The position numbers were made by a program, and so were the translations under genes. A stretch of 64,000 nucleotides of DNA. Origin: Bispira polyomma. Lineage: Eukaryota. This document shows positions 1-64,000 of this stretch, piece after piece (position 1 is the stretch's first letter; each line of letters begins with the position of its first letter). The DNA lies in contig OZ287749.1 of the NCBI GenBank assembly GCA_965649765.1, positions 38,254,001 to 38,318,000 on the forward strand, read 5' to 3'. The notes under the pieces are model-generated. The model was given only the letters and a program-made list of their open reading frames with translations, was not told the origin of the DNA and did no database searches.

Positions 1-1646
1 GCCTCAATCAGGTAGTCAACTGTGATGCTTGCATCCAATGGGGTCATGGTATGTAATCTCTTTTCAGGTCTGTCCCTTTTAGCTGCCTGACTTCGTGTTT
101 GCACTGCATTCACACTTTGGGAATTCTGTTGCGGATCACTTGAAATAACCAGTTGAATATCTTTTCCAGAAGACATCTTCCAGTCTGGATCAGGACTCCC
201 TGGTGACCTCACTCCAGTAATATTTCCCAGCACAAGTGGACAGACAGGATTGTTCATGCACATCGCTTCGACAGTCCCAACAAAATATGGAGTATCAATT
301 TCAATGGTAGCAGAGGACACTCTCTTACCTGTCCCATCCACTAATATACACAGGTGCTTCTTGCCCGTCAGCTGTTCAGGCTCCACCAAGCTTTGCTTTA
401 CCACCACACCAGTACAGCCTGTATCTCTTAAGACATCAACAACATGGGATCCTACTTTTCCTTTTACCACAGGCATGTTCTTCAGAATACCCTTCTGTTT
501 CTCATGTTGATCACATGCCCCACTCACAATAGGAATCTTCTTTCCACATGCCAACTTGATGTTGTCCTGACTGACACAAGCATGCTCACAAGTATGTACA
601 GCACAAGCAGAAGAACCTTCTACACCTTTATCTTTGACCTGAGTCTTTACCGTTTCCTTCATATCTTCAGTAATCGCAGAGGCAATGGTCTTTACCCATG
701 CTTTAGCTTTCAAATGGCAGTCTTTAGCGATATGTCCCATTTTTCCACATTTAAAGCACTTCTTGCCAAAACTACTACCTTGCCTTTTGTTGTCCACTGA
801 AACAGATTTACTAACAGGTGGTTTGGATGTCTGTAAATCAGGATGGGCCGCTAGGTACATCTCTGCCAGTTCCGCCATCTCTGATGCAGTTGTTGGGTTC
901 CTTTCCTTAAGAAAAATAGCAAGACTTTTGCTACTGGCATTAAGAAACTGTTCCCTCACTAATAAGTCTTCAATTCCGTCAAAAGACTTCTCAGTATTGC
1001 TCAGTTCCACCCAACGTTTTAAATAATTACGGAGTCTCTCCATGAACTGACCTGAGCTCTCACCAGGTGTAATTGTACCAGAACGAAACTTGACCCTGAA
1101 GCCCTCATCGTTCAGTTGGTATCTCTTGAGCAAAGCCGTCTTCAGTTTGTCATAATCATTTGCCTCCTCGTTACTGAGTCTTGAATACACTTCCAAGGCC
1201 TTACCAGTTAACAACGCACTAAGATTGATGGACCAACTTTCCTCAGGCCACTTCTGACTTGCAGCGAAACGTTCAAAACGAAGCAAGTAAGCGTCCATAT
1301 CAGACTTCCCATCTTCAAAAACAGGCAACTTTGGAGTATGCGACTTCGTATAATTCACGCTTGAAAAGGTACTTTGCTCAGCCCTGATTGAAACATCTGC
1401 AGCTCTAATCTCCAGTTCTTTCACATCTCTTTCCATCTGTAACCTCTCTCTATCACTTTGCTGTTGCAACTCGACCATATCTCTGTCATGTGCTCTTTTA
1501 AGTCGTCTCTCCTCTCTTTCTCTGTCTTGCACCTCCCTTTCTCTTGCCTGCTCTCCAGCCTGCTCCTCTCTGACAAACTCTCTCAGTTCCAACCCTTCAT
1601 AACCCAACTCCTTCCCGAGTTTAATTAAGCGCTCTAGCTGATCCAT
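1..1646 (-). CDS. Gag-Pol polyprotein, N-terminal part (Gag, protease, start of integrase region); cut by the window edge
   Basis: Matches 6318-7963. ATG at 1646-1644. Absent from the ORF track because its stop lies outside the window. Confidence 0.93.
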   Translation of the reverse strand, partial: MDQLERLIKLGKELGYEGLELREFVREEQAGEQAREREVQDREREERRLKRAHDRDMVELQQQSDRERLQMERDVKELEIRAADVSIRAEQSTFSSVNYTKSHTPKLPVFEDGKSDMDAYLLRFERFAASQKWPEESWSINLSALLTGKALEVYSRLSNEEANDYDKLKTALLKRYQLNDEGFRVKFRSGTITPGESSGQFMERLRNYLKRWVELSNTEKSFDGIEDLLVREQFLNASSKSLAIFLKERNPTTASEMAELAEMYLAAHPDLQTSKPPVSKSVSVDNKRQGSSFGKKCFKCGKMGHIAKDCHLKAKAWVKTIASAITEDMKETVKTQVKDKGVEGSSACAVHTCEHACVSQDNIKLACGKKIPIVSGACDQHEKQKGILKNMPVVKGKVGSHVVDVLRDTGCTGVVVKQSLVEPEQLTGKKHLCILVDGTGKRVSSATIEIDTPYFVGTVEAMCMNNPVCPLVLGNITGVRSPGSPDPDWKMSSGKDIQLVISSDPQQNSQSVNAVQTRSQAAKRDRPEKRLHTMTPLDASITVDYLIE

Positions 1647-1772
1647 GTCACTATGGTTACCTTACACACTACTACTACTGGGGTACAACTTCTGGACAAG
1701 GCACACAAGGCCAACCGTAACACTTTTGATCACTTACACACACTGTATGACTACAGCCACAGAACACTTGAC

Positions 1773-1868
1773 TTGGGAATCCACCCAAAATAATGAGAAT
1801 CCACTCAAATATGTGTGATGAGAATCCACTCTATCACAATCCTAATACTGAGAATCCACTCAGTTATT
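1773..1868 (-). promoter_or_regulatory. Four stem-loops with identical UGGAUU loop in the 5' leader (candidate packaging/dimerisation signal)
   Basis: Plus strand: TTGGG-AATCCA-CCCAA, TGAG-AATCCA-CTCA, TGTGATGAG-AATCCA-CTCtATCACA, AATACTGAG-AATCCA-CTCAGTtATT. Confidence 0.6.
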
Positions 1869-2086: not shown

Positions 2087-2087
2087 A

Positions 2088-2947: not shown

Positions 2948-2961
2948 TACTTCCACCCTAA
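2948..2961 (-). promoter_or_regulatory. Polypurine tract (repeats every 6317 bp)
   Basis: Minus strand TTAGGGTGGAAGTA, ~80 nt after the pol stop and directly followed by TGTT. Confidence 0.6.
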
Positions 2962-3040
2962 GACCATACTTGCTATTGTTACAAAAATAACCGCCAACAA
3001 CCTCACCCACAAACTACTGTTCAGCAATCTTAAAAATAAA

Positions 3041-6000
3041 TTACGCTCTGCTCAGATAGTCAGCAGCAACATTTTCTGAACTCCTTATAGCTCTAATCTT
3101 GAAACTAAATGATTGTAAGAACAATGCCCAACGCATAATGCGGCTATTATCCATTTTTGACCTCTTAATGTAAATGAGGGGCTGATGATCAGTCTCAACT
3201 AAGAATTCTTTCCCATACAAATATGGAGCAAATTTCTTGATTGCCCAAACTAGTGATAAGCATTCTTTCTCTATTACAGCATAGTGCTTTTGAGTATCAG
3301 ACAGCTTTTTACTAGCATATTCTACAGGAAACTTGCCATCATCACCTTCCTGCATCAATACCGCTCCTATACCATATTCAGAGGCATCACTCTGCACAAT
3401 AAATGGTTTCGCAAAATCTGGTAATCTTAGAATTGGTCTCTTTGCTAGAAGTTCTTTCAAAGCCTGAAAAGCTTTATCTTGAGGTTCCTGCCACAGTACT
3501 TTGTTAGGTTGACCTTTCTTAGTGAGATCCGATAATGGTGCAGAGATAGCACTGAAGTTGGGAATATACTTCGAGTAGTAACCAATAAAACCAAGGAAAC
3601 TTCGCACCTGCTTCTTGGTCACAGGTATAGGCACTGACAAAATATTCAAAACCTTTTCTTCGTCCGGTTTCATAGAACCATCACCAACATGATTCCCTAA
3701 AAAATTGAGGTTTTTGAAACCTATTTGACACTTTGACGGCTTTACGGTTAAGTGCGCATTTCTGAGTCGCTGGAAGAGTTTCCTCAATTCACTCAAATGC
3801 TGGTCCCACAAAGGCGTGTGACATAGAATATCATCTACAAAACTGTCACAGAAATACAGATCTTTCAATAACTTCCGCACCATCTTGTTGAAGGTTGCCG
3901 TAGCATTTACCAAGCCAAAAGGCATCTTGAGAAAGCGAAAGCTTCCCTGAGGAGTGAGAAAGCACGTCTTATCTTGACTACCTTCTTCCATTGGTATTTG
4001 CCAGTATCCCTTTGTCATGTCAAACTTACTGAAGAATACATCCCCTGACAATTTTGAATATATGTCATTAGCCGTCATCATTGGCTCTGTTGAAAATACA
4101 GTTTGTAGGTTAAGATTCCGATAATCTGCACAGAAGCGAATTTTCCCGTCCTTTTTCTTCACCAGCACAATAGGTGATGCGTAAGGTGAGTCACAACTAC
4201 CGATCACACCCAACTTCAGCATAGTCTCAACTTCTTCATCAACGACCTTCCGGAGATGATAAGGTATGGGATATGGCCTCTTCCTGACAGGCTCATCAGT
4301 ATTCAACACAATTTTGTGCTCTACTAAATCCGTAGTGCCTGGCAAATCAGAAAATATATCTTGGTACTCTTTGAGTAACTGTTGGACTTCTTGCTTTTGA
4401 TTTTCTGTTAGTGTAGGACTAATGGTCACATCTTTGTAAGATTCATTCTGAAGATACGGAAATAAATCAATTAAGTTTTCTTGCGTCTCTTCTTGTTCCT
4501 CCTCAATCAAAGATACAGCCACCATGTCCAATGGTGCACCACCAACAGGCAAGTCACTTCTCACATCACTTTCACGTCGTTCGAGGTAATGCTTCAACAT
4601 GTTAGCGTGAATAACTTTCACCTTCCCTTTCATGCTGACAGAGTAGTCATTCACACCCTTAACATCCATGACCTCATACGGACCTTTCCAAGACATCAAC
4701 AGTTTATTGGCTACAGTAGGCAGTAATACCAGAACCTTATCACCAACTTGGAATTTCCTCGGTTTGGTCTTCTTATCATACCATATCTTCGATTTTGCTT
4801 GATTCTTTCTCAACTCTTCTTGGGCCAACTTACAAGTATCTTCCAATTTATTTCTCAAATCAATAACATACTCATAGGTTGTCTTGACTTCATCTGGGGT
4901 TCCTTCCTTTGTCCACAACTCATGAAGTATCTGCATAGGTCCACGGACAGTTCTTCCATAGAGCAACTCAAATGGTGAAAATCCTAGGCTAGCTTGAGGA
5001 GTCTCTCTATAGGCAAATAAAACTGCCGGAATGTACCGGTCCCAGTCTTTAGGTTTCTCCTGACATAACCTTCTCAGCATTGACTTCAGTACAAGGTGGA
5101 ATTTCTCAACAAGCCCATTGCACATGGGGTGGTACGGTGTAGTAACCAGCCGGTTGATACTCAGCAACCGTGAGACCTCAGACATCACACTGCTCAGGAA
5201 CTGAGAACCTTGGTCACTCAAAACTTCTGATGGCACACCTACTCTTGTAAATATGTTGACCAATGCCTCGGCAACAGCTTCAGAATCTATGCGTTTCAAT
5301 GGAACAACCTCTGGATACCTGGTGGCATAGTCCATCAAAGTTAACATATAACGGTAGCCCCTATCTGAAACTGGATTAATGGGTCCAACCAAGTCAATCG
5401 CTACCCTTTTGAAGGGCGTGTCAATTATGGGCATGTTTTGCAATGGAACTTTTGGCAGTCTTCCCTTCTGTGAAGTCCTCTGGCATATGTCACACGAATT
5501 ACTGAATCTGCTGACATCATTTTGAAGGCCTGGCCAGTAAAAATTCTGCAAAATCTTGTCCGTTGTCTTTCGTATGCCCAAATGTCCTCCAAGTAAAGCT
5601 TCATGCGCAAGCTTTAGTACTTTTGTTCTAAGTATCTTTGGAACCATCAATTGCTTCACCACGGAGCTGTTGACATCAGACAAAAACCTTCGGTAAAGTA
5701 GTCGAGACTTCACTTCAAACCAGGTCACATTGTTGCCTCTAACACATGACTTCTGCCCACTCTTGGCTAACTCCCAATAACGCTCAAGGCTGCTATCAGA
5801 CATCTGGGCCTCAATCAGGTAGTCAACTGTGATGCTTGCATCCAATGGGGTCATGGTATGTAATCTCTTTTTATCTGAAACTGGATTAATGGGTCCAACC
5901 AAGTCAATCGCTACCCTTTTGAAGGGCGTGTCAATTATGGGCATGTTTTGCAATGGAACTTTTGGCAGTCTTCCCTTCTGTGAAGTCCTCTGGCATATGT

Positions 6001-7963
6001 CACACGAATTACTGAATCTGCTGACATCATTTTGAAGGCCTGGCCAGTAAAAATTCTGCAAAATCTTGTCCGTTGTCTTTCGTATGCCCAAATGTCCTCC
6101 AAGTAAAGCTTCATGCGCAAGCTTTAGTACTTTTGTTCTAAGTATCTTTGGAACCATCAATTGCTTCACCACGGAGCTGTTGACATCAGACAAAAACCTT
6201 CGGTAAAGTAGTCGAGACTTCACTTCAAACCAGGTCACATTGTTGCCTCTAACACATGACTTCTGCCCACTCTTGGCTAACTCCCAATAACGCTCAAGGC
6301 TGCTATCAGACATCTGGGCCTCAATCAGGTAGTCAACTGTGATGCTTGCATCCAATGGGGTCATGGTATGTAATCTCTTTTCAGGTCTGTCCCTTTTAGC
6401 TGCCTGACTTCGTGTTTGCACTGCATTCACACTTTGGGAATTCTGTTGCGGATCACTTGAAATAACCAGTTGAATATCTTTTCCAGAAGACATCTTCCAG
6501 TCTGGATCAGGACTCCCTGGTGACCTCACTCCAGTAATATTTCCCAGCACAAGTGGACAGACAGGATTGTTCATGCACATCGCTTCGACAGTCCCAACAA
6601 AATATGGAGTATCAATTTCAATGGTAGCAGAGGACACTCTCTTACCTGTCCCATCCACTAATATACACAGGTGCTTCTTGCCCGTCAGCTGTTCAGGCTC
6701 CACCAAGCTTTGCTTTACCACCACACCAGTACAGCCTGTATCTCTTAAGACATCAACAACATGGGATCCTACTTTTCCTTTTACCACAGGCATGTTCTTC
6801 AGAATACCCTTCTGTTTCTCATGTTGATCACATGCCCCACTCACAATAGGAATCTTCTTTCCACATGCCAACTTGATGTTGTCCTGACTGACACAAGCAT
6901 GCTCACAAGTATGTACAGCACAAGCAGAAGAACCTTCTACACCTTTATCTTTGACCTGAGTCTTTACCGTTTCCTTCATATCTTCAGTAATCGCAGAGGC
7001 AATGGTCTTTACCCATGCTTTAGCTTTCAAATGGCAGTCTTTAGCGATATGTCCCATTTTTCCACATTTAAAGCACTTCTTGCCAAAACTACTACCTTGC
7101 CTTTTGTTGTCCACTGAAACAGATTTACTAACAGGTGGTTTGGATGTCTGTAAATCAGGATGGGCCGCTAGGTACATCTCTGCCAGTTCCGCCATCTCTG
7201 ATGCAGTTGTTGGGTTCCTTTCCTTAAGAAAAATAGCAAGACTTTTGCTACTGGCATTAAGAAACTGTTCCCTCACTAATAAGTCTTCAATTCCGTCAAA
7301 AGACTTCTCAGTATTGCTCAGTTCCACCCAACGTTTTAAATAATTACGGAGTCTCTCCATGAACTGACCTGAGCTCTCACCAGGTGTAATTGTACCAGAA
7401 CGAAACTTGACCCTGAAGCCCTCATCGTTCAGTTGGTATCTCTTGAGCAAAGCCGTCTTCAGTTTGTCATAATCATTTGCCTCCTCGTTACTGAGTCTTG
7501 AATACACTTCCAAGGCCTTACCAGTTAACAACGCACTAAGATTGATGGACCAACTTTCCTCAGGCCACTTCTGACTTGCAGCGAAACGTTCAAAACGAAG
7601 CAAGTAAGCGTCCATATCAGACTTCCCATCTTCAAAAACAGGCAACTTTGGAGTATGCGACTTCGTATAATTCACGCTTGAAAAGGTACTTTGCTCAGCC
7701 CTGATTGAAACATCTGCAGCTCTAATCTCCAGTTCTTTCACATCTCTTTCCATCTGTAACCTCTCTCTATCACTTTGCTGTTGCAACTCGACCATATCTC
7801 TGTCATGTGCTCTTTTAAGTCGTCTCTCCTCTCTTTCTCTGTCTTGCACCTCCCTTTCTCTTGCCTGCTCTCCAGCCTGCTCCTCTCTGACAAACTCTCT
7901 CAGTTCCAACCCTTCATAACCCAACTCCTTCCCGAGTTTAATTAAGCGCTCTAGCTGATCCAT
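3041..7963 (-). CDS. Gag-Pol polyprotein (Gag-PR-IN-RT-RNase H), Gmr1-like Ty3/Gypsy
   Basis: 1640 aa. CCHC knuckle CFKCGKMGHIAKDC (7034-7075); protease LRDTG (DTG 6734-6742); integrase HHCC twice, D(AIDL)-D(SDQG)-35 aa-E(GLVEK), GPY motif WKGPY; Gypsy-type RT (YASPIVLVKKKDGKIRFCADYR, KFDMTKGYWQI, MPFGL, FVDD at 3830-3841); RNase H (SDAS, EKE, TDH, ADYLSR). Confidence 0.97.
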   Translation of the reverse strand: MDQLERLIKLGKELGYEGLELREFVREEQAGEQAREREVQDREREERRLKRAHDRDMVELQQQSDRERLQMERDVKELEIRAADVSIRAEQSTFSSVNYTKSHTPKLPVFEDGKSDMDAYLLRFERFAASQKWPEESWSINLSALLTGKALEVYSRLSNEEANDYDKLKTALLKRYQLNDEGFRVKFRSGTITPGESSGQFMERLRNYLKRWVELSNTEKSFDGIEDLLVREQFLNASSKSLAIFLKERNPTTASEMAELAEMYLAAHPDLQTSKPPVSKSVSVDNKRQGSSFGKKCFKCGKMGHIAKDCHLKAKAWVKTIASAITEDMKETVKTQVKDKGVEGSSACAVHTCEHACVSQDNIKLACGKKIPIVSGACDQHEKQKGILKNMPVVKGKVGSHVVDVLRDTGCTGVVVKQSLVEPEQLTGKKHLCILVDGTGKRVSSATIEIDTPYFVGTVEAMCMNNPVCPLVLGNITGVRSPGSPDPDWKMSSGKDIQLVISSDPQQNSQSVNAVQTRSQAAKRDRPEKRLHTMTPLDASITVDYLIEAQMSDSSLERYWELAKSGQKSCVRGNNVTWFEVKSRLLYRRFLSDVNSSVVKQLMVPKILRTKVLKLAHEALLGGHLGIRKTTDKILQNFYWPGLQNDVSRFSNSCDICQRTSQKGRLPKVPLQNMPIIDTPFKRVAIDLVGPINPVSDKKRLHTMTPLDASITVDYLIEAQMSDSSLERYWELAKSGQKSCVRGNNVTWFEVKSRLLYRRFLSDVNSSVVKQLMVPKILRTKVLKLAHEALLGGHLGIRKTTDKILQNFYWPGLQNDVSRFSNSCDICQRTSQKGRLPKVPLQNMPIIDTPFKRVAIDLVGPINPVSDRGYRYMLTLMDYATRYPEVVPLKRIDSEAVAEALVNIFTRVGVPSEVLSDQGSQFLSSVMSEVSRLLSINRLVTTPYHPMCNGLVEKFHLVLKSMLRRLCQEKPKDWDRYIPAVLFAYRETPQASLGFSPFELLYGRTVRGPMQILHELWTKEGTPDEVKTTYEYVIDLRNKLEDTCKLAQEELRKNQAKSKIWYDKKTKPRKFQVGDKVLVLLPTVANKLLMSWKGPYEVMDVKGVNDYSVSMKGKVKVIHANMLKHYLERRESDVRSDLPVGGAPLDMVAVSLIEEEQEETQENLIDLFPYLQNESYKDVTISPTLTENQKQEVQQLLKEYQDIFSDLPGTTDLVEHKIVLNTDEPVRKRPYPIPYHLRKVVDEEVETMLKLGVIGSCDSPYASPIVLVKKKDGKIRFCADYRNLNLQTVFSTEPMMTANDIYSKLSGDVFFSKFDMTKGYWQIPMEEGSQDKTCFLTPQGSFRFLKMPFGLVNATATFNKMVRKLLKDLYFCDSFVDDILCHTPLWDQHLSELRKLFQRLRNAHLTVKPSKCQIGFKNLNFLGNHVGDGSMKPDEEKVLNILSVPIPVTKKQVRSFLGFIGYYSKYIPNFSAISAPLSDLTKKGQPNKVLWQEPQDKAFQALKELLAKRPILRLPDFAKPFIVQSDASEYGIGAVLMQEGDDGKFPVEYASKKLSDTQKHYAVIEKECLSLVWAIKKFAPYLYGKEFLVETDHQPLIYIKRSKMDNSRIMRWALFLQSFSFKIRAIRSSENVAADYLSRA
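5362..6381. repeat. Perfect in-frame tandem duplication, 2 x 510 bp, in the integrase N-terminal region
   Basis: 5362-5871 equals 5872-6381. Also at 11679, 17996, 24313, 30630, 36947, 43264, 49581, 55898 and 62215. The peptide KRLHTM...PVSD appears twice. Confidence 0.97.
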
Positions 7964-8404
7964 GTCACTATGGTTACCTTACACACTACTACTACTGGGG
8001 TACAACTTCTGGACAAGGCACACAAGGCCAACCGTAACACTTTTGATCACTTACACACACTGTATGACTACAGCCACAGAACACTTGACTTGGGAATCCA
8101 CCCAAAATAATGAGAATCCACTCAAATATGTGTGATGAGAATCCACTCTATCACAATCCTAATACTGAGAATCCACTCAGTTATTTACCTGAACACTTGT
8201 TCACAACGTAATAACCTTAAGTTGAGTATCCACGCACCCACCCAAATAGTATGAAATCCAACACAACTGTTCCCGGAAATAATACTATGTACCCCCCTAA
8301 GCTGATATACATATAATACATGCAACTACCTTACCCTGCCACACCTAGTATATACTTCTATGTTACATGTCACTAAATTTGGGATATCCTGGTCATGGCA
8401 CCAA

Positions 8405-9264
8405 TGTTACATTTATGTTACATTTTAACACTAAAATGTTGGGTCAAAGATCGTATAGTAGTTCCCAAACCAAGTTTATTCTAAATACATGAAAACAACA
8501 ACAATATACTATAACAAAAATAATATTTAAACACCCTAAATATCTGACGCCAGAACTATTAACGGTAATAATATTCCACAAGATGTAAACAAAACAAATG
8601 GTAAGTCAATTCAAAGTTCACAGTTGAACAACAGTTAATTTGCTGTAACTCTACACCAGCAAATAAGGTACGTATCCAGCCTGTATAGCAGTATGGTAAT
8701 TCTCCTTGAATGTAATGTACATATAATAGTTCACCAGCATGTAGGAAATCAGAGTAGTCAAAGGTAACCAGTAGCGACCTCATTATACTAGGATCACATC
8801 AGTAAGACTTGGGTAGGTATAACCTCATGTAGCCCAGTTCACTACCAGCTATAGGGTGATGCTCACTATAGTCTACAAATAAAGGACTAAACTACTGAAC
8901 ATTGGGCTTGGAAATAAACTAAAGTAGTTCTCAACTGAGTATACATTAAAGCATGATAATAACAACCTACATCTATACAATAAGAAATAAACTACACATT
9001 AAACTAAAGAATCCTAATGCACAAATTATATAAAGTAATATTTACTCACATTATACACCCCAGTACAAAATAACCCAACTTGCTCCACCTTGTCCTTTTA
9101 ACATGTGAGAAAGATTATACAAAGACAGAAGCCTAAATACCATAACAGGCAATATTCACATATTGAAAATCACACACACACAATCTGTGTTCTAACCATA
9201 GTATTTTCGTATTTAATTTACACTCAAATAACCTAACCATAATATTTACACTCAATACACAACA
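8405..9264 (-). repeat. LTR copy
   Basis: Copy of 2088-2947 at +6317. Confidence 0.75.
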
Positions 9265-9357
9265 TACTTCCACCCTAAGACCATACTTGCTATTGTTACA
9301 AAAATAACCGCCAACAACCTCACCCACAAACTACTGTTCAGCAATCTTAAAAATAAA

Positions 9358-12300
9358 TTACGCTCTGCTCAGATAGTCAGCAGCAACATTTTCTGAACTC
9401 CTTATAGCTCTAATCTTGAAACTAAATGATTGTAAGAACAATGCCCAACGCATAATGCGGCTATTATCCATTTTTGACCTCTTAATGTAAATGAGGGGCT
9501 GATGATCAGTCTCAACTAAGAATTCTTTCCCATACAAATATGGAGCAAATTTCTTGATTGCCCAAACTAGTGATAAGCATTCTTTCTCTATTACAGCATA
9601 GTGCTTTTGAGTATCAGACAGCTTTTTACTAGCATATTCTACAGGAAACTTGCCATCATCACCTTCCTGCATCAATACCGCTCCTATACCATATTCAGAG
9701 GCATCACTCTGCACAATAAATGGTTTCGCAAAATCTGGTAATCTTAGAATTGGTCTCTTTGCTAGAAGTTCTTTCAAAGCCTGAAAAGCTTTATCTTGAG
9801 GTTCCTGCCACAGTACTTTGTTAGGTTGACCTTTCTTAGTGAGATCCGATAATGGTGCAGAGATAGCACTGAAGTTGGGAATATACTTCGAGTAGTAACC
9901 AATAAAACCAAGGAAACTTCGCACCTGCTTCTTGGTCACAGGTATAGGCACTGACAAAATATTCAAAACCTTTTCTTCGTCCGGTTTCATAGAACCATCA
10001 CCAACATGATTCCCTAAAAAATTGAGGTTTTTGAAACCTATTTGACACTTTGACGGCTTTACGGTTAAGTGCGCATTTCTGAGTCGCTGGAAGAGTTTCC
10101 TCAATTCACTCAAATGCTGGTCCCACAAAGGCGTGTGACATAGAATATCATCTACAAAACTGTCACAGAAATACAGATCTTTCAATAACTTCCGCACCAT
10201 CTTGTTGAAGGTTGCCGTAGCATTTACCAAGCCAAAAGGCATCTTGAGAAAGCGAAAGCTTCCCTGAGGAGTGAGAAAGCACGTCTTATCTTGACTACCT
10301 TCTTCCATTGGTATTTGCCAGTATCCCTTTGTCATGTCAAACTTACTGAAGAATACATCCCCTGACAATTTTGAATATATGTCATTAGCCGTCATCATTG
10401 GCTCTGTTGAAAATACAGTTTGTAGGTTAAGATTCCGATAATCTGCACAGAAGCGAATTTTCCCGTCCTTTTTCTTCACCAGCACAATAGGTGATGCGTA
10501 AGGTGAGTCACAACTACCGATCACACCCAACTTCAGCATAGTCTCAACTTCTTCATCAACGACCTTCCGGAGATGATAAGGTATGGGATATGGCCTCTTC
10601 CTGACAGGCTCATCAGTATTCAACACAATTTTGTGCTCTACTAAATCCGTAGTGCCTGGCAAATCAGAAAATATATCTTGGTACTCTTTGAGTAACTGTT
10701 GGACTTCTTGCTTTTGATTTTCTGTTAGTGTAGGACTAATGGTCACATCTTTGTAAGATTCATTCTGAAGATACGGAAATAAATCAATTAAGTTTTCTTG
10801 CGTCTCTTCTTGTTCCTCCTCAATCAAAGATACAGCCACCATGTCCAATGGTGCACCACCAACAGGCAAGTCACTTCTCACATCACTTTCACGTCGTTCG
10901 AGGTAATGCTTCAACATGTTAGCGTGAATAACTTTCACCTTCCCTTTCATGCTGACAGAGTAGTCATTCACACCCTTAACATCCATGACCTCATACGGAC
11001 CTTTCCAAGACATCAACAGTTTATTGGCTACAGTAGGCAGTAATACCAGAACCTTATCACCAACTTGGAATTTCCTCGGTTTGGTCTTCTTATCATACCA
11101 TATCTTCGATTTTGCTTGATTCTTTCTCAACTCTTCTTGGGCCAACTTACAAGTATCTTCCAATTTATTTCTCAAATCAATAACATACTCATAGGTTGTC
11201 TTGACTTCATCTGGGGTTCCTTCCTTTGTCCACAACTCATGAAGTATCTGCATAGGTCCACGGACAGTTCTTCCATAGAGCAACTCAAATGGTGAAAATC
11301 CTAGGCTAGCTTGAGGAGTCTCTCTATAGGCAAATAAAACTGCCGGAATGTACCGGTCCCAGTCTTTAGGTTTCTCCTGACATAACCTTCTCAGCATTGA
11401 CTTCAGTACAAGGTGGAATTTCTCAACAAGCCCATTGCACATGGGGTGGTACGGTGTAGTAACCAGCCGGTTGATACTCAGCAACCGTGAGACCTCAGAC
11501 ATCACACTGCTCAGGAACTGAGAACCTTGGTCACTCAAAACTTCTGATGGCACACCTACTCTTGTAAATATGTTGACCAATGCCTCGGCAACAGCTTCAG
11601 AATCTATGCGTTTCAATGGAACAACCTCTGGATACCTGGTGGCATAGTCCATCAAAGTTAACATATAACGGTAGCCCCTATCTGAAACTGGATTAATGGG
11701 TCCAACCAAGTCAATCGCTACCCTTTTGAAGGGCGTGTCAATTATGGGCATGTTTTGCAATGGAACTTTTGGCAGTCTTCCCTTCTGTGAAGTCCTCTGG
11801 CATATGTCACACGAATTACTGAATCTGCTGACATCATTTTGAAGGCCTGGCCAGTAAAAATTCTGCAAAATCTTGTCCGTTGTCTTTCGTATGCCCAAAT
11901 GTCCTCCAAGTAAAGCTTCATGCGCAAGCTTTAGTACTTTTGTTCTAAGTATCTTTGGAACCATCAATTGCTTCACCACGGAGCTGTTGACATCAGACAA
12001 AAACCTTCGGTAAAGTAGTCGAGACTTCACTTCAAACCAGGTCACATTGTTGCCTCTAACACATGACTTCTGCCCACTCTTGGCTAACTCCCAATAACGC
12101 TCAAGGCTGCTATCAGACATCTGGGCCTCAATCAGGTAGTCAACTGTGATGCTTGCATCCAATGGGGTCATGGTATGTAATCTCTTTTTATCTGAAACTG
12201 GATTAATGGGTCCAACCAAGTCAATCGCTACCCTTTTGAAGGGCGTGTCAATTATGGGCATGTTTTGCAATGGAACTTTTGGCAGTCTTCCCTTCTGTGA

Positions 12301-14280
12301 AGTCCTCTGGCATATGTCACACGAATTACTGAATCTGCTGACATCATTTTGAAGGCCTGGCCAGTAAAAATTCTGCAAAATCTTGTCCGTTGTCTTTCGT
12401 ATGCCCAAATGTCCTCCAAGTAAAGCTTCATGCGCAAGCTTTAGTACTTTTGTTCTAAGTATCTTTGGAACCATCAATTGCTTCACCACGGAGCTGTTGA
12501 CATCAGACAAAAACCTTCGGTAAAGTAGTCGAGACTTCACTTCAAACCAGGTCACATTGTTGCCTCTAACACATGACTTCTGCCCACTCTTGGCTAACTC
12601 CCAATAACGCTCAAGGCTGCTATCAGACATCTGGGCCTCAATCAGGTAGTCAACTGTGATGCTTGCATCCAATGGGGTCATGGTATGTAATCTCTTTTGA
12701 GGTCTGTCCCTTTTAGCTGCCTGACTTCGTGTTTGCACTGCATTCACACTTTGGGAATTCTGTTGCGGATCACTTGAAATAACCAGTTGAATATCTTTTC
12801 CAGAAGACATCTTCCAGTCTGGATCAGGACTCCCTGGTGACCTCACTCCAGTAATATTTCCCAGCACAAGTGGACAGACAGGATTGTTCATGCACATCGC
12901 TTCGACAGTCCCAACAAAATATGGAGTATCAATTTCAATGGTAGCAGAGGACACTCTCTTACCTGTCCCATCCACTAATATACACAGGTGCTTCTTGCCC
13001 GTCAGCTGTTCAGGCTCCACCAAGCTTTGCTTTACCACCACACCAGTACAGCCTGTATCTCTTAAGACATCAACAACATGGGATCCTACTTTTCCTTTTA
13101 CCACAGGCATGTTCTTCAGAATACCCTTCTGTTTCTCATGTTGATCACATGCCCCACTCACAATAGGAATCTTCTTTCCACATGCCAACTTGATGTTGTC
13201 CTGACTGACACAAGCATGCTCACAAGTATGTACAGCACAAGCAGAAGAACCTTCTACACCTTTATCTTTGACCTGAGTCTTTACCGTTTCCTTCATATCT
13301 TCAGTAATCGCAGAGGCAATGGTCTTTACCCATGCTTTAGCTTTCAAATGGCAGTCTTTAGCGATATGTCCCATTTTTCCACATTTAAAGCACTTCTTGC
13401 CAAAACTACTACCTTGCCTTTTGTTGTCCACTGAAACAGATTTACTAACAGGTGGTTTGGATGTCTGTAAATCAGGATGGGCCGCTAGGTACATCTCTGC
13501 CAGTTCCGCCATCTCTGATGCAGTTGTTGGGTTCCTTTCCTTAAGAAAAATAGCAAGACTTTTGCTACTGGCATTAAGAAACTGTTCCCTCACTAATAAG
13601 TCTTCAATTCCGTCAAAAGACTTCTCAGTATTGCTCAGTTCCACCCAACGTTTTAAATAATTACGGAGTCTCTCCATGAACTGACCTGAGCTCTCACCAG
13701 GTGTAATTGTACCAGAACGAAACTTGACCCTGAAGCCCTCATCGTTCAGTTGGTATCTCTTGAGCAAAGCCGTCTTCAGTTTGTCATAATCATTTGCCTC
13801 CTCGTTACTGAGTCTTGAATACACTTCCAAGGCCTTACCAGTTAACAACGCACTAAGATTGATGGACCAACTTTCCTCAGGCCACTTCTGACTTGCAGCG
13901 AAACGTTCAAAACGAAGCAAGTAAGCGTCCATATCAGACTTCCCATCTTCAAAAACAGGCAACTTTGGAGTATGCGACTTCGTATAATTCACGCTTGAAA
14001 AGGTACTTTGCTCAGCCCTGATTGAAACATCTGCAGCTCTAATCTCCAGTTCTTTCACATCTCTTTCCATCTGTAACCTCTCTCTATCACTTTGCTGTTG
14101 CAACTCGACCATATCTCTGTCATGTGCTCTTTTAAGTCGTCTCTCCTCTCTTTCTCTGTCTTGCACCTCCCTTTCTCTTGCCTGCTCTCCAGCCTGCTCC
14201 TCTCTGACAAACTCTCTCAGTTCCAACCCTTCATAACCCAACTCCTTCCCGAGTTTAATTAAGCGCTCTAGCTGATCCAT
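9358..14280 (-). CDS. Gag-Pol polyprotein copy (E528Q variant)
   Basis: Same 1640-aa ORF; reads RDRPQK instead of RDRPEK owing to C>G at 12699. Confidence 0.97.
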   Translation of the reverse strand: MDQLERLIKLGKELGYEGLELREFVREEQAGEQAREREVQDREREERRLKRAHDRDMVELQQQSDRERLQMERDVKELEIRAADVSIRAEQSTFSSVNYTKSHTPKLPVFEDGKSDMDAYLLRFERFAASQKWPEESWSINLSALLTGKALEVYSRLSNEEANDYDKLKTALLKRYQLNDEGFRVKFRSGTITPGESSGQFMERLRNYLKRWVELSNTEKSFDGIEDLLVREQFLNASSKSLAIFLKERNPTTASEMAELAEMYLAAHPDLQTSKPPVSKSVSVDNKRQGSSFGKKCFKCGKMGHIAKDCHLKAKAWVKTIASAITEDMKETVKTQVKDKGVEGSSACAVHTCEHACVSQDNIKLACGKKIPIVSGACDQHEKQKGILKNMPVVKGKVGSHVVDVLRDTGCTGVVVKQSLVEPEQLTGKKHLCILVDGTGKRVSSATIEIDTPYFVGTVEAMCMNNPVCPLVLGNITGVRSPGSPDPDWKMSSGKDIQLVISSDPQQNSQSVNAVQTRSQAAKRDRPQKRLHTMTPLDASITVDYLIEAQMSDSSLERYWELAKSGQKSCVRGNNVTWFEVKSRLLYRRFLSDVNSSVVKQLMVPKILRTKVLKLAHEALLGGHLGIRKTTDKILQNFYWPGLQNDVSRFSNSCDICQRTSQKGRLPKVPLQNMPIIDTPFKRVAIDLVGPINPVSDKKRLHTMTPLDASITVDYLIEAQMSDSSLERYWELAKSGQKSCVRGNNVTWFEVKSRLLYRRFLSDVNSSVVKQLMVPKILRTKVLKLAHEALLGGHLGIRKTTDKILQNFYWPGLQNDVSRFSNSCDICQRTSQKGRLPKVPLQNMPIIDTPFKRVAIDLVGPINPVSDRGYRYMLTLMDYATRYPEVVPLKRIDSEAVAEALVNIFTRVGVPSEVLSDQGSQFLSSVMSEVSRLLSINRLVTTPYHPMCNGLVEKFHLVLKSMLRRLCQEKPKDWDRYIPAVLFAYRETPQASLGFSPFELLYGRTVRGPMQILHELWTKEGTPDEVKTTYEYVIDLRNKLEDTCKLAQEELRKNQAKSKIWYDKKTKPRKFQVGDKVLVLLPTVANKLLMSWKGPYEVMDVKGVNDYSVSMKGKVKVIHANMLKHYLERRESDVRSDLPVGGAPLDMVAVSLIEEEQEETQENLIDLFPYLQNESYKDVTISPTLTENQKQEVQQLLKEYQDIFSDLPGTTDLVEHKIVLNTDEPVRKRPYPIPYHLRKVVDEEVETMLKLGVIGSCDSPYASPIVLVKKKDGKIRFCADYRNLNLQTVFSTEPMMTANDIYSKLSGDVFFSKFDMTKGYWQIPMEEGSQDKTCFLTPQGSFRFLKMPFGLVNATATFNKMVRKLLKDLYFCDSFVDDILCHTPLWDQHLSELRKLFQRLRNAHLTVKPSKCQIGFKNLNFLGNHVGDGSMKPDEEKVLNILSVPIPVTKKQVRSFLGFIGYYSKYIPNFSAISAPLSDLTKKGQPNKVLWQEPQDKAFQALKELLAKRPILRLPDFAKPFIVQSDASEYGIGAVLMQEGDDGKFPVEYASKKLSDTQKHYAVIEKECLSLVWAIKKFAPYLYGKEFLVETDHQPLIYIKRSKMDNSRIMRWALFLQSFSFKIRAIRSSENVAADYLSRA

Positions 14281-53576: not shown

Positions 53577-56500
53577 TTACGCTCTGCTCAGATAGTCAGC
53601 AGCAACATTTTCTGAACTCCTTATAGCTCTAATCTTGAAACTAAATGATTGTAAGAACAATGCCCAACGCATAATGCGGCTATTATCCATTTTTGACCTC
53701 TTAATGTAAATGAGGGGCTGATGATCAGTCTCAACTAAGAATTCTTTCCCATACAAATATGGAGCAAATTTCTTGATTGCCCAAACTAGTGATAAGCATT
53801 CTTTCTCTATTACAGCATAGTGCTTTTGAGTATCAGACAGCTTTTTACTAGCATATTCTACAGGAAACTTGCCATCATCACCTTCCTGCATCAATACCGC
53901 TCCTATACCATATTCAGAGGCATCACTCTGCACAATAAATGGTTTCGCAAAATCTGGTAATCTTAGAATTGGTCTCTTTGCTAGAAGTTCTTTCAAAGCC
54001 TGAAAAGCTTTATCTTGAGGTTCCTGCCACAGTACTTTGTTAGGTTGACCTTTCTTAGTGAGATCCGATAATGGTGCAGAGATAGCACTGAAGTTGGGAA
54101 TATACTTCGAGTAGTAACCAATAAAACCAAGGAAACTTCGCACCTGCTTCTTGGTCACAGGTATAGGCACTGACAAAATATTCAAAACCTTTTCTTCGTC
54201 CGGTTTCATAGAACCATCACCAACATGATTCCCTAAAAAATTGAGGTTTTTGAAACCTATTTGACACTTTGACGGCTTTACGGTTAAGTGCGCATTTCTG
54301 AGTCGCTGGAAGAGTTTCCTCAATTCACTCAAATGCTGGTCCCACAAAGGCGTGTGACATAGAATATCATCTACAAAACTGTCACAGAAATACAGATCTT
54401 TCAATAACTTCCGCACCATCTTGTTGAAGGTTGCCGTAGCATTTACCAAGCCAAAAGGCATCTTGAGAAAGCGAAAGCTTCCCTGAGGAGTGAGAAAGCA
54501 CGTCTTATCTTGACTACCTTCTTCCATTGGTATTTGCCAGTATCCCTTTGTCATGTCAAACTTACTGAAGAATACATCCCCTGACAATTTTGAATATATG
54601 TCATTAGCCGTCATCATTGGCTCTGTTGAAAATACAGTTTGTAGGTTAAGATTCCGATAATCTGCACAGAAGCGAATTTTCCCGTCCTTTTTCTTCACCA
54701 GCACAATAGGTGATGCGTAAGGTGAGTCACAACTACCGATCACACCCAACTTCAGCATAGTCTCAACTTCTTCATCAACGACCTTCCGGAGATGATAAGG
54801 TATGGGATATGGCCTCTTCCTGACAGGCTCATCAGTATTCAACACAATTTTGTGCTCTACTAAATCCGTAGTGCCTGGCAAATCAGAAAATATATCTTGG
54901 TACTCTTTGAGTAACTGTTGGACTTCTTGCTTTTGATTTTCTGTTAGTGTAGGACTAATGGTCACATCTTTGTAAGATTCATTCTGAAGATACGGAAATA
55001 AATCAATTAAGTTTTCTTGCGTCTCTTCTTGTTCCTCCTCAATCAAAGATACAGCCACCATGTCCAATGGTGCACCACCAACAGGCAAGTCACTTCTCAC
55101 ATCACTTTCACGTCGTTCGAGGTAATGCTTCAACATGTTAGCGTGAATAACTTTCACCTTCCCTTTCATGCTGACAGAGTAGTCATTCACACCCTTAACA
55201 TCCATGACCTCATACGGACCTTTCCAAGACATCAACAGTTTATTGGCTACAGTAGGCAGTAATACCAGAACCTTATCACCAACTTGGAATTTCCTCGGTT
55301 TGGTCTTCTTATCATACCATATCTTCGATTTTGCTTGATTCTTGCTCAACTCTTCTTGGGCCAACTTACAAGTATCTTCCAATTTATTTCTCAAATCAAT
55401 AACATACTCATAGGTTGTCTTGACTTCATCTGGGGTTCCTTCCTTTGTCCACAACTCATGAAGTATCTGCATAGGTCCACGGACAGTTCTTCCATAGAGC
55501 AACTCAAATGGTGAAAATCCTAGGCTAGCTTGAGGAGTCTCTCTATAGGCAAATAAAACTGCCGGAATGTACCGGTCCCAGTCTTTAGGTTTCTCCTGAC
55601 ATAACCTTCTCAGCATTGACTTCAGTACAAGGTGGAATTTCTCAACAAGCCCATTGCACATGGGGTGGTACGGTGTAGTAACCAGCCGGTTGATACTCAG
55701 CAACCGTGAGACCTCAGACATCACACTGCTCAGGAACTGAGAACCTTGGTCACTCAAAACTTCTGATGGCACACCTACTCTTGTAAATATGTTGACCAAT
55801 GCCTCGGCAACAGCTTCAGAATCTATGCGTTTCAATGGAACAACCTCTGGATACCTGGTGGCATAGTCCATCAAAGTTAACATATAACGGTAGCCCCTAT
55901 CTGAAACTGGATTAATGGGTCCAACCAAGTCAATCGCTACCCTTTTGAAGGGCGTGTCAATTATGGGCATGTTTTGCAATGGAACTTTTGGCAGTCTTCC
56001 CTTCTGTGAAGTCCTCTGGCATATGTCACACGAATTACTGAATCTGCTGACATCATTTTGAAGGCCTGGCCAGTAAAAATTCTGCAAAATCTTGTCCGTT
56101 GTCTTTCGTATGCCCAAATGTCCTCCAAGTAAAGCTTCATGCGCAAGCTTTAGTACTTTTGTTCTAAGTATCTTTGGAACCATCAATTGCTTCACCACGG
56201 AGCTGTTGACATCAGACAAAAACCTTCGGTAAAGTAGTCGAGACTTCACTTCAAACCAGGTCACATTGTTGCCTCTAACACATGACTTCTGCCCACTCTT
56301 GGCTAACTCCCAATAACGCTCAAGGCTGCTATCAGACATCTGGGCCTCAATCAGGTAGTCAACTGTGATGCTTGCATCCAATGGGGTCATGGTATGTAAT
56401 CTCTTTTTATCTGAAACTGGATTAATGGGTCCAACCAAGTCAATCGCTACCCTTTTGAAGGGCGTGTCAATTATGGGCATGTTTTGCAATGGAACTTTTG

Positions 56501-62800: not shown

Positions 62801-64000
62801 TTGCAATGGAACTTTTGGCAGTCTTCCCTTCTGTGAAGTCCTCTGGCATATGTCACACGAATTACTGAATCTGCTGACATCATTTTGAAGGCCTGGCCAG
62901 TAAAAATTCTGCAAAATCTTGTCCGTTGTCTTTCGTATGCCCAAATGTCCTCCAAGTAAAGCTTCATGCGCAAGCTTTAGTACTTTTGTTCTAAGTATCT
63001 TTGGAACCATCAATTGCTTCACCACGGAGCTGTTGACATCAGACAAAAACCTTCGGTAAAGTAGTCGAGACTTCACTTCAAACCAGGTCACATTGTTGCC
63101 TCTAACACATGACTTCTGCCCACTCTTGGCTAACTCCCAATAACGCTCAAGGCTGCTATCAGACATCTGGGCCTCAATCAGGTAGTCAACTGTGATGCTT
63201 GCATCCAATGGGGTCATGGTATGTAATCTCTTTTCAGGTCTGTCCCTTTTAGCTGCCTGACTTCGTGTTTGCACTGCATTCACACTTTGGGAATTCTGTT
63301 GCGGATCACTTGAAATAACCAGTTGAATATCTTTTCCAGAAGACATCTTCCAGTCTGGATCAGGACTCCCTGGTGACCTCACTCCAGTAATATTTCCCAG
63401 CACAAGTGGACAGACAGGATTGTTCATGCACATCGCTTCGACAGTCCCAACAAAATATGGAGTATCAATTTCAATGGTAGCAGAGGACACTCTCTTACCT
63501 GTCCCATCCACTAATATACACAGGTGCTTCTTGCCCGTCAGCTGTTCAGGCTCCACCAAGCTTTGCTTTACCACCACACCAGTACAGCCTGTATCTCTTA
63601 AGACATCAACAACATGGGATCCTACTTTTCCTTTTACCACAGGCATGTTCTTCAGAATACCCTTCTGTTTCTCATGTTGATCACATGCCCCACTCACAAT
63701 AGGAATCTTCTTTCCACATGCCAACTTGATGTTGTCCTGACTGACACAAGCATGCTCACAAGTATGTACAGCACAAGCAGAAGAACCTTCTACACCTTTA
63801 TCTTTGACCTGAGTCTTTACCGTTTCCTTCATATCTTCAGTAATCGCAGAGGCAATGGTCTTTACCCATGCTTTAGCTTTCAAATGGCAGTCTTTAGCGA
63901 TATGTCCCATTTTTCCACATTTAAAGCACTTCTTGCCAAAACTACTACCTTGCCTTTTGTTGTCCACTGAAACAGATTTACTAACAGGTGGTTTGGATGT
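59894..64000 (-). CDS. Gag-Pol polyprotein copy, 5' end beyond the window edge
   Basis: The track's 1357-aa ORF starts at an internal GTG (63967). The frame stays open to 64000, and the period predicts the true ATG at 64816. Confidence 0.95.
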   Translation of the reverse strand, partial: TSKPPVSKSVSVDNKRQGSSFGKKCFKCGKMGHIAKDCHLKAKAWVKTIASAITEDMKETVKTQVKDKGVEGSSACAVHTCEHACVSQDNIKLACGKKIPIVSGACDQHEKQKGILKNMPVVKGKVGSHVVDVLRDTGCTGVVVKQSLVEPEQLTGKKHLCILVDGTGKRVSSATIEIDTPYFVGTVEAMCMNNPVCPLVLGNITGVRSPGSPDPDWKMSSGKDIQLVISSDPQQNSQSVNAVQTRSQAAKRDRPEKRLHTMTPLDASITVDYLIEAQMSDSSLERYWELAKSGQKSCVRGNNVTWFEVKSRLLYRRFLSDVNSSVVKQLMVPKILRTKVLKLAHEALLGGHLGIRKTTDKILQNFYWPGLQNDVSRFSNSCDICQRTSQKGRLPKVPLQNMPIIDTPFKRVAIDLVGPINPVSDKKRLHTMTPLDASITVDYLIEAQMSDSSLERYWELAKSGQKSCVRGNNVTWFEVKSRLLYRRFLSDVNSSVVKQLMVPKILRTKVLKLAHEALLGGHLGIRKTTDKILQNFYWPGLQNDVSRFSNSCDICQRTSQKGRLPKVPLQNMPIIDTPFKRVAIDLVGPINPVSDRGYRYMLTLMDYATRYPEVVPLKRIDSEAVAEALVNIFTRVGVPSEVLSDQGSQFLSSVMSEVSRLLSINRLVTTPYHPMCNGLVEKFHLVLKSMLRRLCQEKPKDWDRYIPAVLFAYRETPQASLGFSPFELLYGRTVRGPMQILHELWTKEGTPDEVKTTYEYVIDLRNKLEDTCKLAQEELRKNQAKSKIWYDKKTKPRKFQVGDKVLVLLPTVANKLLMSWKGPYEVMDVKGVNDYSVSMKGKVKVIHANMLKHYLERRESDVRSDLPVGGAPLDMVAVSLIEEEQEETQENLIDLFPYLQNESYKDVTISPTLTENQKQEVQQLLKEYQDIFSDLPGTTDLVEHKIVLNTDEPVRKRPYPIPYHLRKVVDEEVETMLKLGVIGSCDSPYASPIVLVKKKDGKIRFCADYRNLNLQTVFSTEPMMTANDIYSKLSGDVFFSKFDMTKGYWQIPMEEGSQDKTCFLTPQGSFRFLKMPFGLVNATATFNKMVRKLLKDLYFCDSFVDDILCHTPLWDQHLSELRKLFQRLRNAHLTVKPSKCQIGFKNLNFLGNHVGDGSMKPDEEKVLNILSVPIPVTKKQVRSFLGFIGYYSKYIPNFSAISAPLSDLTKKGQPNKVLWQEPQDKAFQALKELLAKRPILRLPDFAKPFIVQSDASEYGIGAVLMQEGDDGKFPVEYASKKLSDTQKHYAVIEKECLSLVWAIKKFAPYLYGKEFLVETDHQPLIYIKRSKMDNSRIMRWALFLQSFSFKIRAIRSSENVAADYLSRA

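What the first reader, a model, noticed from the sequence alone, without database searches (positions are those of the whole stretch)
1..64000. Macrosatellite made of intact retrotransposons: at least 10 near-identical units, each equal to a 1-LTR circle
Seen: the layout is (LTR-internal)n with a constant 6,317-bp period, one LTR per junction, no TSD or spacer, and nine complete open ORFs. Known: independent integrations give two LTRs per element plus TSDs. Shared-LTR tandems can arise by unequal LTR-LTR recombination or by recombination/rolling-circle copying of 1-LTR circles. Inference: one founder was very recently amplified at the DNA level into a coding-competent satellite. Each LTR could act as promoter for one unit and poly(A) site for the next, so the locus could be a strong Gag/RT source, a piRNA source, or nascent centromeric/heterochromatic satellite. 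An assembly or rolling-circle library artefact cannot be excluded from sequence alone.
Basis: partly seen in the sequence, partly recalled or inferred. Interest (0 to 1): 0.85.

Follow-up and report, generated by a model that had tools for sequence, protein, structure and literature searches.

The report
Tandem array of one LTR retrotransposon
The whole 64-kb window is about ten almost identical head-to-tail copies of one Gmr1-like (Ty3/gypsy) retrotransposon, with neighbouring copies sharing a single LTR; this layout is real in the sequence and very young, but it is a known kind, and every copy has a duplicated piece inside its integrase gene.

Summary
The window holds 10.13 head-to-tail units of exactly 6,317 bp, with no indels and only three singleton substitutions. 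There are ten 860-bp LTRs, one per junction, with no spacer, no TSD and no LTR-LTR junction. There are nine complete 1,640-aa ORFs on the minus strand.

The element is a Gmr1-like Ty3/gypsy retrotransposon: gag with a SCAN-like capsid, CCHC, protease, then integrase before RT/RNase H. I fixed the LTR ends against a canonical two-LTR relative with a 5-bp TSD.

It is absent from all relatives checked, so "intact" is overstated.

Shared-LTR tandems are already documented in yeasts, Drosophila, plants and bivalves. Integrase-defective Tf1 makes exactly this junction.

My best reading is a very recent chromosomal array made by homologous recombination (confidence 0.55). The window has no flanks, and a 27-kb stretch without variants leaves copy number unverified. 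An artefact from amplified 1-LTR circles therefore remains possible (0.2).

This is a new member of a known kind. Interest is 0.4.

The parts
1..64000 (-). Head-to-tail array of 10.13 units with a 6,317-bp period. The array runs off both ends of the window.
2948..9264 (-). One reference unit, read on the minus strand: LTR, 1-nt spacer, PBS, 5' leader, gag-pol ORF, 3' UTR, PPT.
   Evidence: Boundaries were set by comparison with relatives.
8405..9264 (-). LTR of 860 bp with TGTT...AACA ends, TATATAA at 9032-9026 and AATAAA at 8480-8475. The same LTR occurs at 2088-2947 + n x 6317 for n = 0..9.
   Evidence: The ends are conserved with L002 and L001 and match the LTR ends of the two-LTR relative L040.
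8386..8403 (-). Primer-binding site, TGGTGCCATGACCAGGAT, one base after the LTR end.
   Evidence: It is identical in L002 amid diverged flanks. L040 has the same site with one mismatch in the same position.
9267..9276 (-). Polypurine tract AGGGTGGAAG, two bases before the LTR start. The copy belonging to the reference unit is at 2950-2959.
   Evidence: It is conserved just after the stop codon in L001 and L002 and sits in the equivalent position in L040. Coordinates were checked.
9358..14280 (-). gag-pol ORF of 1,640 aa. This copy carries E528Q. Identical-length ORFs lie at 3041-7963 + n x 6317 for n = 0..8.
13480..13740 (-). Gag capsid C-terminal domain (SCAN-like, aa 181-267). The CCHC knuckle is at aa 295-310 (13351-13398).
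   Evidence: The SCAN-to-Gmr1 gag relation is described in PMC4592553.
12841..13098 (-). Aspartic protease region, with the invariant D408 in the motif LRDTG.
11679..12698 (-). Perfect 510-bp tandem duplication (11679-12188 equals 12189-12698), in frame. It repeats 170 aa: the integrase N-terminal region, the HHCC zinc domain and the first catalytic-core strand with its Asp. It is present in every unit.
   Evidence: There are two Integrase_H2C2 stretches here against one in each of six relatives. It appears as a 170-aa insertion relative to eight relatives.
11443..11961 (-). Complete integrase copy: HHCC domain at aa 774-831 and rve core at aa 850-946. H787, H794, C824, C827, D857, D917 and E953 are invariant.
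   Evidence: It aligns to PFV integrase residues 49-280 and to Ty3 Gag-Pol 7q5b.
9424..10479 (-). Reverse transcriptase (aa 1268-1425, with D1377 and D1378) and RNase H (aa 1491-1619), both downstream of the integrase.
8092..8178 (-). Four copies (three exact, one near) of a 12-nt motif, GAGTGGATTCTC, in the 5' leader.
   Evidence: The motif is also in the leaders of L002 and L040.
12699..12699 (.). Singleton substitution C>G (E528Q). It is the first base outside the 510-bp duplication.
28014..28014 (.). Singleton substitution G>A in the U3 part of LTR 5.
55344..55344 (.). Singleton substitution T>G (R1052S).

Best explanation
The window is a real, very young chromosomal array of at least 10 copies of one Gmr1-like Ty3/gypsy LTR retrotransposon, and consecutive copies share one 860-bp LTR. 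I infer the following history. One founder copy, already carrying the 510-bp integrase duplication, was integrated in the usual way. Homologous recombination through the LTR then produced a dimer with a shared LTR, either by unequal exchange between the 5' and 3' LTRs of sister chromatids or by recombination of a cDNA with the resident copy. Unequal exchange between the now 6.3-kb identical units expanded the dimer. Because every internal region has an LTR on both sides, each unit is a complete transcription unit: promoter in the upstream LTR, poly(A) signal in the downstream one. The array could therefore supply full-length RNA and Gag-Pol. Whether its integrase still works is unknown. What is shown: the layout, the family, the duplication, and the near-identity of the units. 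What is inferred: the chromosomal location, the order of events, the recombination route and any expression.
For: The period is exact and there are only three singleton differences. There are ten LTRs, each lying directly between a PPT and a PBS, with no TSD, no spacer and no LTR-LTR junction. This is the junction that LTR-LTR recombination or cDNA recombination produces (PMC5932611 Fig. 1A; PMC11042837). The family normally integrates classically: relative L040 has two 1,320-bp LTRs and a 5-bp TSD, and L041 has two separate two-LTR copies. The array is therefore a secondary rearrangement, not the family's mode of insertion. All units share the same derived 510-bp duplication, which points to one founder. 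The singleton substitutions exclude a purely computational repetition. They are also not the systematic or indel errors expected from long-read consensus of identical contexts (inference). Assemblers tend to collapse near-identical tandem repeats rather than inflate them (general knowledge). Tandem copies of intact LTR elements are seen in other long-read assemblies (preprint 10.64898/2026.09.17.752431).
Against: No unique flank is visible, so chromosomal location and the array ends are unverified. The stretch 28014-55344 (27.3 kb, 4.3 units) has no distinguishing base, so reads shorter than that cannot fix the copy number. One of the three substitutions sits exactly at the edge of the internal duplication (post hoc chance of about 0.003), which could be consensus noise. 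Neither ORF version is on record in the public gene collection and the best relative is only 76% identical, so no independent assembly confirms the locus.
Confidence: 0.55

Rival explanations
1. The array is an assembly or library artefact. The real molecules would be single elements or 6,317-bp 1-LTR circles. The ten-unit array would come from rolling-circle (phi29) amplification of such circles before sequencing, or from an assembler walking repeatedly round a loop in its graph.
For: The unit equals a 1-LTR circle exactly. No flank is present in the window. A 27.3-kb stretch has no variant. One substitution lies exactly at a repeat edge. The exact protein is absent from public collections.
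Against: Three private substitutions and no indels are not what raw concatemer reads look like. A collapsed loop is normally output as one unit, not ten (general knowledge). Shared-LTR tandems are common real structures.
Confidence: 0.2
2. The array grew by integrase-independent re-insertion of its own cDNA. The duplication would cripple the integrase. cDNA made from array transcripts would anneal at the PBS or LTR of resident copies through a Rad52-type single-strand-annealing pathway and add one unit at a time, each separated by a single LTR.
For: [quoted passage not shown] Ty1 integrase mutants also show increased recombinational insertion (PMC11042837). Every unit here carries an abnormal integrase. 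Three changes in about 10 units (0.3 per 6.3 kb) is within the usual range of reverse-transcriptase error (my own knowledge of typical rates, not tested).
Against: The second integrase copy is complete, with all catalytic and zinc-binding residues conserved, so the enzyme may work. Integrase could also be supplied in trans by other copies. The same junction arises from plain unequal exchange. Nothing in the sequence separates the two routes.
Confidence: 0.15
3. The array is an in vivo rolling-circle product. A 1-LTR circle would be replicated in the cell into a linear concatemer, which either persists extrachromosomally or was inserted into a chromosome in one step.
For: The unit equals a 1-LTR circle. 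The units are almost identical, with only singleton changes and no higher-order pattern. The mechanism is one of three proposed for tandem TEs (PMC5932611 Fig. 1B).
Against: No origin or replication function is apparent in the unit. The mechanism is poorly documented for LTR elements. The sequence cannot distinguish it from unequal exchange.
Confidence: 0.1

Closest known systems
Tandem Tf1/Tf2 elements of Schizosaccharomyces pombe, and Ty1/Ty5 multimers of S. cerevisiae (PMC11042837 and the work it cites: Sharon et al. 1994, Ke and Voytas 1997)
   Same: These are full-length, coding LTR retrotransposons in head-to-tail order, separated by a single LTR with no TSD between them. They form by homologous recombination and are favoured when the integrase is defective.
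   Different: The yeast cases are dimers or short multimers of Ty3/gypsy (Tf) or copia (Ty1/Ty5) elements with the usual pol order for their group. Here there are at least 10 units of a Gmr1-like element in what is probably a marine animal. The integrase is duplicated in frame rather than frameshifted, and its activity is unknown.
Shared-LTR tandems of Drosophila LTR retrotransposons (McGurk and Barbash 2018, PMC5932611)
   Same: Adjacent elements share one LTR, an arrangement attributed to ectopic LTR recombination. The authors proposed it as raw material for satellites.
   Different: Those are mostly low-copy dimers inferred from paired-end reads. They are not a 64-kb array of near-identical units.
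Arrays of non-autonomous TRIMs: Cassandra in plants (PMC7215508) and biv-TRIM in clams (PMC6934838, up to TDR58_I57)
   Same: They follow the same formula, LTRx_I(x-1), with many units.
   Different: Those units are a few hundred bases long and have no coding capacity. Here each unit is 6.3 kb with a full gag-pol ORF.
Gmr1-like clade of Ty3/gypsy elements (described in PMC8220671; the SCAN relation is in PMC4592553)
   Same: It has gypsy-type RT, RNase H and integrase domains with the integrase upstream of RT, and a gag capsid that matches the SCAN domain.
   Different: Placement in a tree with the Gmr1 reference was not done, because no reference sequence was on hand. This copy is about 170 aa longer than all relatives because of the integrase duplication.
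Tandem duplication of intact LTR elements inside centromeric satellites (preprint 10.64898/2026.09.17.752431, section 9)
   Same: Several high-identity intact LTR elements lie on one strand and are ascribed to host recombination after one integration.
   Different: Those copies keep their own two LTRs, their TSDs and intervening satellite. Here nothing lies between units except the shared LTR, and no link to a centromere can be tested.

Membership tests
LTR retrotransposon (Ty3/gypsy, Metaviridae-like) | Long terminal repeat with TG...CA ends, with a PBS just downstream of the 5' LTR and a PPT just upstream of the 3' LTR. | tested here: met
   The 860-bp LTR has TGTT...AACA ends, the PBS starts one base after it and the PPT ends two bases before it. 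The same ends are seen in the two-LTR relative L040 and are conserved in L001 and L002.
LTR retrotransposon (Ty3/gypsy, Metaviridae-like) | A gag-pol with CCHC nucleocapsid, DTG protease, gypsy-type RT and RNase H, and an HHCC plus DDE integrase. | tested here: met
   The invariant residues are D408, H787, H794, C824, C827, D857, D917, E953, D1377 and D1378. PDB matches are to PFV integrase and Ty3 Gag-Pol.
LTR retrotransposon (Ty3/gypsy, Metaviridae-like) | A target-site duplication flanking the insertion. | not testable with these tools
   No array end lies in the window. The relative L040 shows a 5-bp TSD.
Gmr1-like clade | A pol order of PR-IN-RT-RH, with the integrase upstream of RT. | tested here: met
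   The integrase is at aa 604-946 and RT/RNase H at aa 1268-1619. Six relatives have the same order.
Gmr1-like clade | A gag capsid C-terminal domain homologous to the SCAN domain. | tested here: met
   PF02023 matches aa 181-267 with E = 2e-9, above the gathering score. The relation is stated in PMC4592553.
Gmr1-like clade | Phylogenetic grouping with Gmr1 reference elements in RT or IN trees. | not tested
   No Gmr1 reference sequence was available from the tools. The named relatives are unannotated proteins of echinoderms, a hemichordate, a brachiopod, bivalves and a coral.
Shared-LTR tandem array, LTRx_I(x-1) | Exactly one LTR between consecutive internal regions, with no TSD or host DNA between units. 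| tested here: met
   There are ten LTRs for nine complete and two cut internal regions, no LTR-LTR junction, and a constant 6,317-bp period.
Shared-LTR tandem array, LTRx_I(x-1) | The array is bounded by an LTR at each end, with one TSD pair from the founder insertion. | not testable with these tools
   The array runs off both ends of the window.
Satellite or macrosatellite DNA | A long head-to-tail chromosomal array whose copy number is supported independently of the assembly. | not testable with these tools
   Only the head-to-tail order can be seen in the window. Reads, depth and cytology are not available.
1-LTR circle or eccDNA | Unit length equals the internal region plus one LTR. | tested here: met
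   The 6,317-bp unit is 860 bp of LTR plus 5,457 bp of internal region. This is true of any shared-LTR tandem, so it does not discriminate.
1-LTR circle or eccDNA | A covalently closed circular molecule. | not testable with these tools
   Topology cannot be read from a linear window.
Endogenous pararetrovirus tandem array | No integrase and no LTR, and a unit equal to a circular virus genome. | tested here: not met
   Integrase domains and an LTR with PBS and PPT are present.

The most novel reading that the evidence does not exclude
The in-frame integrase duplication disables normal integration. The locus then becomes a self-feeding array: its own transcripts are reverse-transcribed and the cDNA re-enters by annealing to resident copies, adding shared-LTR units. 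This would be a natural animal example of the integrase-independent pathway so far shown only in yeasts, caught at the moment a coding retrotransposon turns into a satellite.
Probability: 0.15. Interest if true: 0.7.

Novelty: new member of a known kind. Interest (0 to 1): 0.4.

Why it matters
If the array is real, it is an unusually clean and very early snapshot of a transposable element becoming a tandem repeat. It has ten or more coding units, about 99.995% identical, with nothing but a shared LTR between them, in a retrotransposon clade (Gmr1-like) and a host group where this has not been described. The same integrase anomaly in every unit gives a concrete, testable link to the integrase-independent tandem-forming pathway known from fission and budding yeast. 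If it is an artefact, it is a useful warning about amplified 1-LTR circles in assemblies.

Tried and rejected
- **Tandem Repeats Finder:** it found nothing because its longest period is 500. I measured the period directly instead.
- **First PPT guess:** I first took the purine run at about 9098-9078 as the PPT, which gave an LTR of about 670 bp. I rejected it because the tract at 9276-9267 and the following TGTT are conserved in L001 and L002 and match the LTR start of the two-LTR relative L040.
- **Exact-sequence look-ups:** both ORF versions returned nothing.
- **Collection scans:** scans of viral contigs by PBS pattern and by protein returned nothing. The metagenome scan gave only distant relatives (54% identity or less) on short contigs.
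- **Tandem arrangement in relatives:** I looked for it and did not find it. L040 is a single two-LTR copy. L041 holds two separate two-LTR copies. In L042 the gene table shows a single copy of the element; I ran no repeat analysis there.
- **Other features:** Rfam found nothing in one unit. Small ORFs on either strand have no Pfam match. No tRNA gene in the larger loci could be matched to the PBS, so the priming tRNA is unidentified.
- **Pararetrovirus reading:** rejected, because an integrase and an LTR are present.
- **Host:** it could not be named. The closest relatives come from unnamed ENA assemblies, and named relatives at about 49-54% identity span several marine invertebrate phyla.
Full report
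**Observation**

The window contains only A, C, G and T. Shifting it by 6,317 bases leaves 6 mismatches in 57,683 positions, while shifts of 6,315-6,319 other than 6,317 mismatch at about 74%. The six mismatches reduce to three private substitutions, each in a single unit: 12699 C>G, 28014 G>A and 55344 T>G. There are no indels. The window is therefore 10.13 head-to-tail units at about 99.995% identity. Tandem Repeats Finder was blind to this only because its longest period is 500. All long ORFs are on the minus strand: nine complete ORFs of 1,640 aa, spaced 6,317 bp apart, and a tenth cut by the window end. Seven of the nine proteins are identical. The other two differ by one residue each, E528Q and R1052S.

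**What the unit is**

Pfam places the following along the ORF:
- a SCAN-like capsid domain at aa 181-267
- a CCHC knuckle at aa 295-310
- two Integrase_H2C2 zinc domains
- an rve core at aa 850-946
- RVT_1 at aa 1268-1425
- gypsy-type RNase H at aa 1491-1619

An LRDTG protease motif with invariant D408 lies between the knuckle and the integrase. The order is therefore gag-PR-IN-RT-RH. That is gypsy-type domains in a copia-like order, the hallmark of the Gmr1-like group (PMC8220671). The gag of that group is the known relative of the SCAN domain (PMC4592553). Homologues with the same domain set are numerous. Two from an unnamed ENA assembly are 76% and 71% identical. Named ones at about 49-54% identity come from sea stars, sea urchins, crinoids, an acorn worm, a brachiopod, scallops, an oyster and a coral. 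The host is probably a marine invertebrate, but I could not name it. Against the two closest relatives, synonymous sites are saturated and pN/pS is about 0.2, so the lineage has evolved as a functional element.

**LTR boundaries**

With only one LTR per unit, its ends cannot be found by self-comparison, so I used relatives. Upstream of gag, a block covering the LTR end and an 18-nt site starting with TGG is identical in the window and in L002, although the surrounding leader has diverged. Just after the stop codon, a short purine tract followed by TGTT is conserved in the window, L001 and L002.

A 64%-identical relative on an 825-kb contig (L040) is a canonical insertion. It has:
- two 1,320-bp LTRs with 4 mismatches
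- TGTT...AACA ends
- a 5-bp target-site duplication
- the PPT directly before the 3' LTR
- the same PBS, with one mismatch, one base after the 5' LTR

Transferring these landmarks gives an 860-bp LTR at 9264-8405 (minus strand), a PBS at 8403-8386 and a PPT at 9276-9267. TATATAA lies at 9032-9026 and AATAAA at 8480-8475. Ten such LTRs lie at 2088-2947 + n x 6317. Nine are identical and the fifth carries the substitution at 28014. No LTR-LTR junction exists. Every junction is therefore PPT-LTR-PBS with no host base between units.

The ORF is about 140-170 aa longer than its roughly 1,500-aa relatives. BLASTP against the closest relative aligns residues 1 to about 717 and residues 701-1640 to overlapping parts of the subject. 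Self-comparison shows a 170-aa segment repeated exactly. At the DNA level, 11679-12188 and 12189-12698 are identical: a perfect in-frame 510-bp tandem duplication with no microhomology at its edges. It is present in every unit.

The duplication repeats the integrase N-terminal region, the HHCC domain and the first strand of the catalytic core with its Asp. It is followed by a complete integrase whose H787, H794, C824, C827, D857, D917 and E953 are invariant in the family. That complete copy aligns to PFV integrase 49-280 and to Ty3 Gag-Pol. Six relatives have a single zinc domain, and eight relatives show the segment as an insertion. The duplication is therefore derived and marks a single founder. 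Whether the enzyme still works cannot be told from sequence, so "intact" is too strong.

**How it most likely arose**

The family normally inserts classically. L040 is a single two-LTR copy, L041 holds two separate two-LTR copies, and in L042 the gene table shows a single copy, though I ran no repeat analysis on that locus. The array is therefore a secondary product.

The literature offers three routes to tandem elements (PMC5932611 Fig. 1):
- LTR-LTR ectopic recombination, which gives shared LTRs
- rolling-circle copying of a circle
- double insertion, which leaves a TSD in the junction

Double insertion is excluded here because no TSD is present in the junctions. Work on fission yeast shows that Tf1 with a frameshifted integrase inserts next to resident copies. 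[quoted passage not shown] The same paper reports that wild isolates carry such tandems and that Ty1 integrase mutants behave similarly (PMC11042837).

My best reading (confidence 0.55) is a chromosomal array. One founder carrying the duplication became a dimer by recombination through the LTR, and the dimer then expanded by unequal exchange between 6.3-kb identical units, very recently. Three private changes in 64 kb is about 5e-5 per site. The more specific idea that the abnormal integrase drives growth by re-insertion of the array's own cDNA is attractive, but I rate it at about 0.15. The second integrase copy looks complete, and plain unequal exchange gives the same junction.

**Real or artefact**

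The three substitutions exclude a purely computational wrap-around. The absence of indels shows that the window is a consensus, not a raw concatemer read. Three points weigh against taking the copy number at face value:
- No flank is visible.
- The 27.3 kb between 28014 and 55344 has no distinguishing base.
- The substitution at 12699 is the first base outside the internal duplication. The post hoc chance of this is about 0.003, so it may be consensus noise.

I give an artefact from amplified 1-LTR circles, or from the assembler, a probability of 0.2, and an in vivo rolling-circle concatemer 0.1. Only reads, depth, the library method and the contig ends can settle this.

**Comparison with what is known, and novelty**

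Shared-LTR tandems are documented in several groups:
- S. cerevisiae and S. pombe
- most Drosophila LTR families
- plant Cassandra TRIMs with 12 or more units
- clam biv-TRIMs, up to 58 repeats

Tandem copies of intact LTR elements also appear in recent long-read centromere surveys. What is unusual here is the combination: at least ten full-length coding units, near-perfect identity, a Gmr1-like element, and a shared integrase anomaly. I file it as a new member of a known kind, with interest 0.4.

**Other checks**

Rfam found nothing in one unit. Small ORFs on both strands have no Pfam match. No tRNA matching the PBS was found in the fetched loci.

I compared only natural copies. No contig looked human, and no spliced model was involved.

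Noticed in passing
window 8092-8178 (minus strand) and the same phase in every unit; L002:288-376; L040:9656-9693: The 12-nt motif GAGTGGATTCTC occurs three times exactly and once as a near copy in the 5' leader of each unit. That is 30 hits in the window against 0.37 expected. It occurs twice each in the leaders of relatives that are 64-71% identical in protein, although the rest of the leader has diverged. It could be a packaging or dimerisation signal, or a transcription-factor site.
   Followed up: partly
window 12699: One of the only three substitutions in 64 kb is the first base outside the 510-bp internal duplication. The post hoc chance is about 0.003. It may be consensus or polishing noise at a repeat edge, or a scar of a recombination event.
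   Followed up: partly
window 12699, 28014, 55344: Both coding substitutions are non-synonymous transversions (E528Q and R1052S). The third is a transition in U3. None is shared by two units, so there is no higher-order repeat pattern.
   Followed up: yes
window 2948-9264 (one unit): The unit has 41% G+C and a CpG observed/expected ratio of 0.41. This marked CpG depletion would fit a host that methylates CpG, or a long history of methylation of this lineage.
   Followed up: no
L040:8141-15770: This relative is a canonical two-LTR copy with a 5-bp TSD and 0.3% LTR divergence. Its gag-pol is called as two overlapping ORFs (919 aa and 561 aa) split between the integrase and RT, which is probably a frameshift.
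   Followed up: partly
L041:141-14947: Two separate two-LTR copies of a related element lie 3.5 kb apart in the same orientation on one contig. Unequal exchange could turn this kind of configuration into a tandem.
   Followed up: partly
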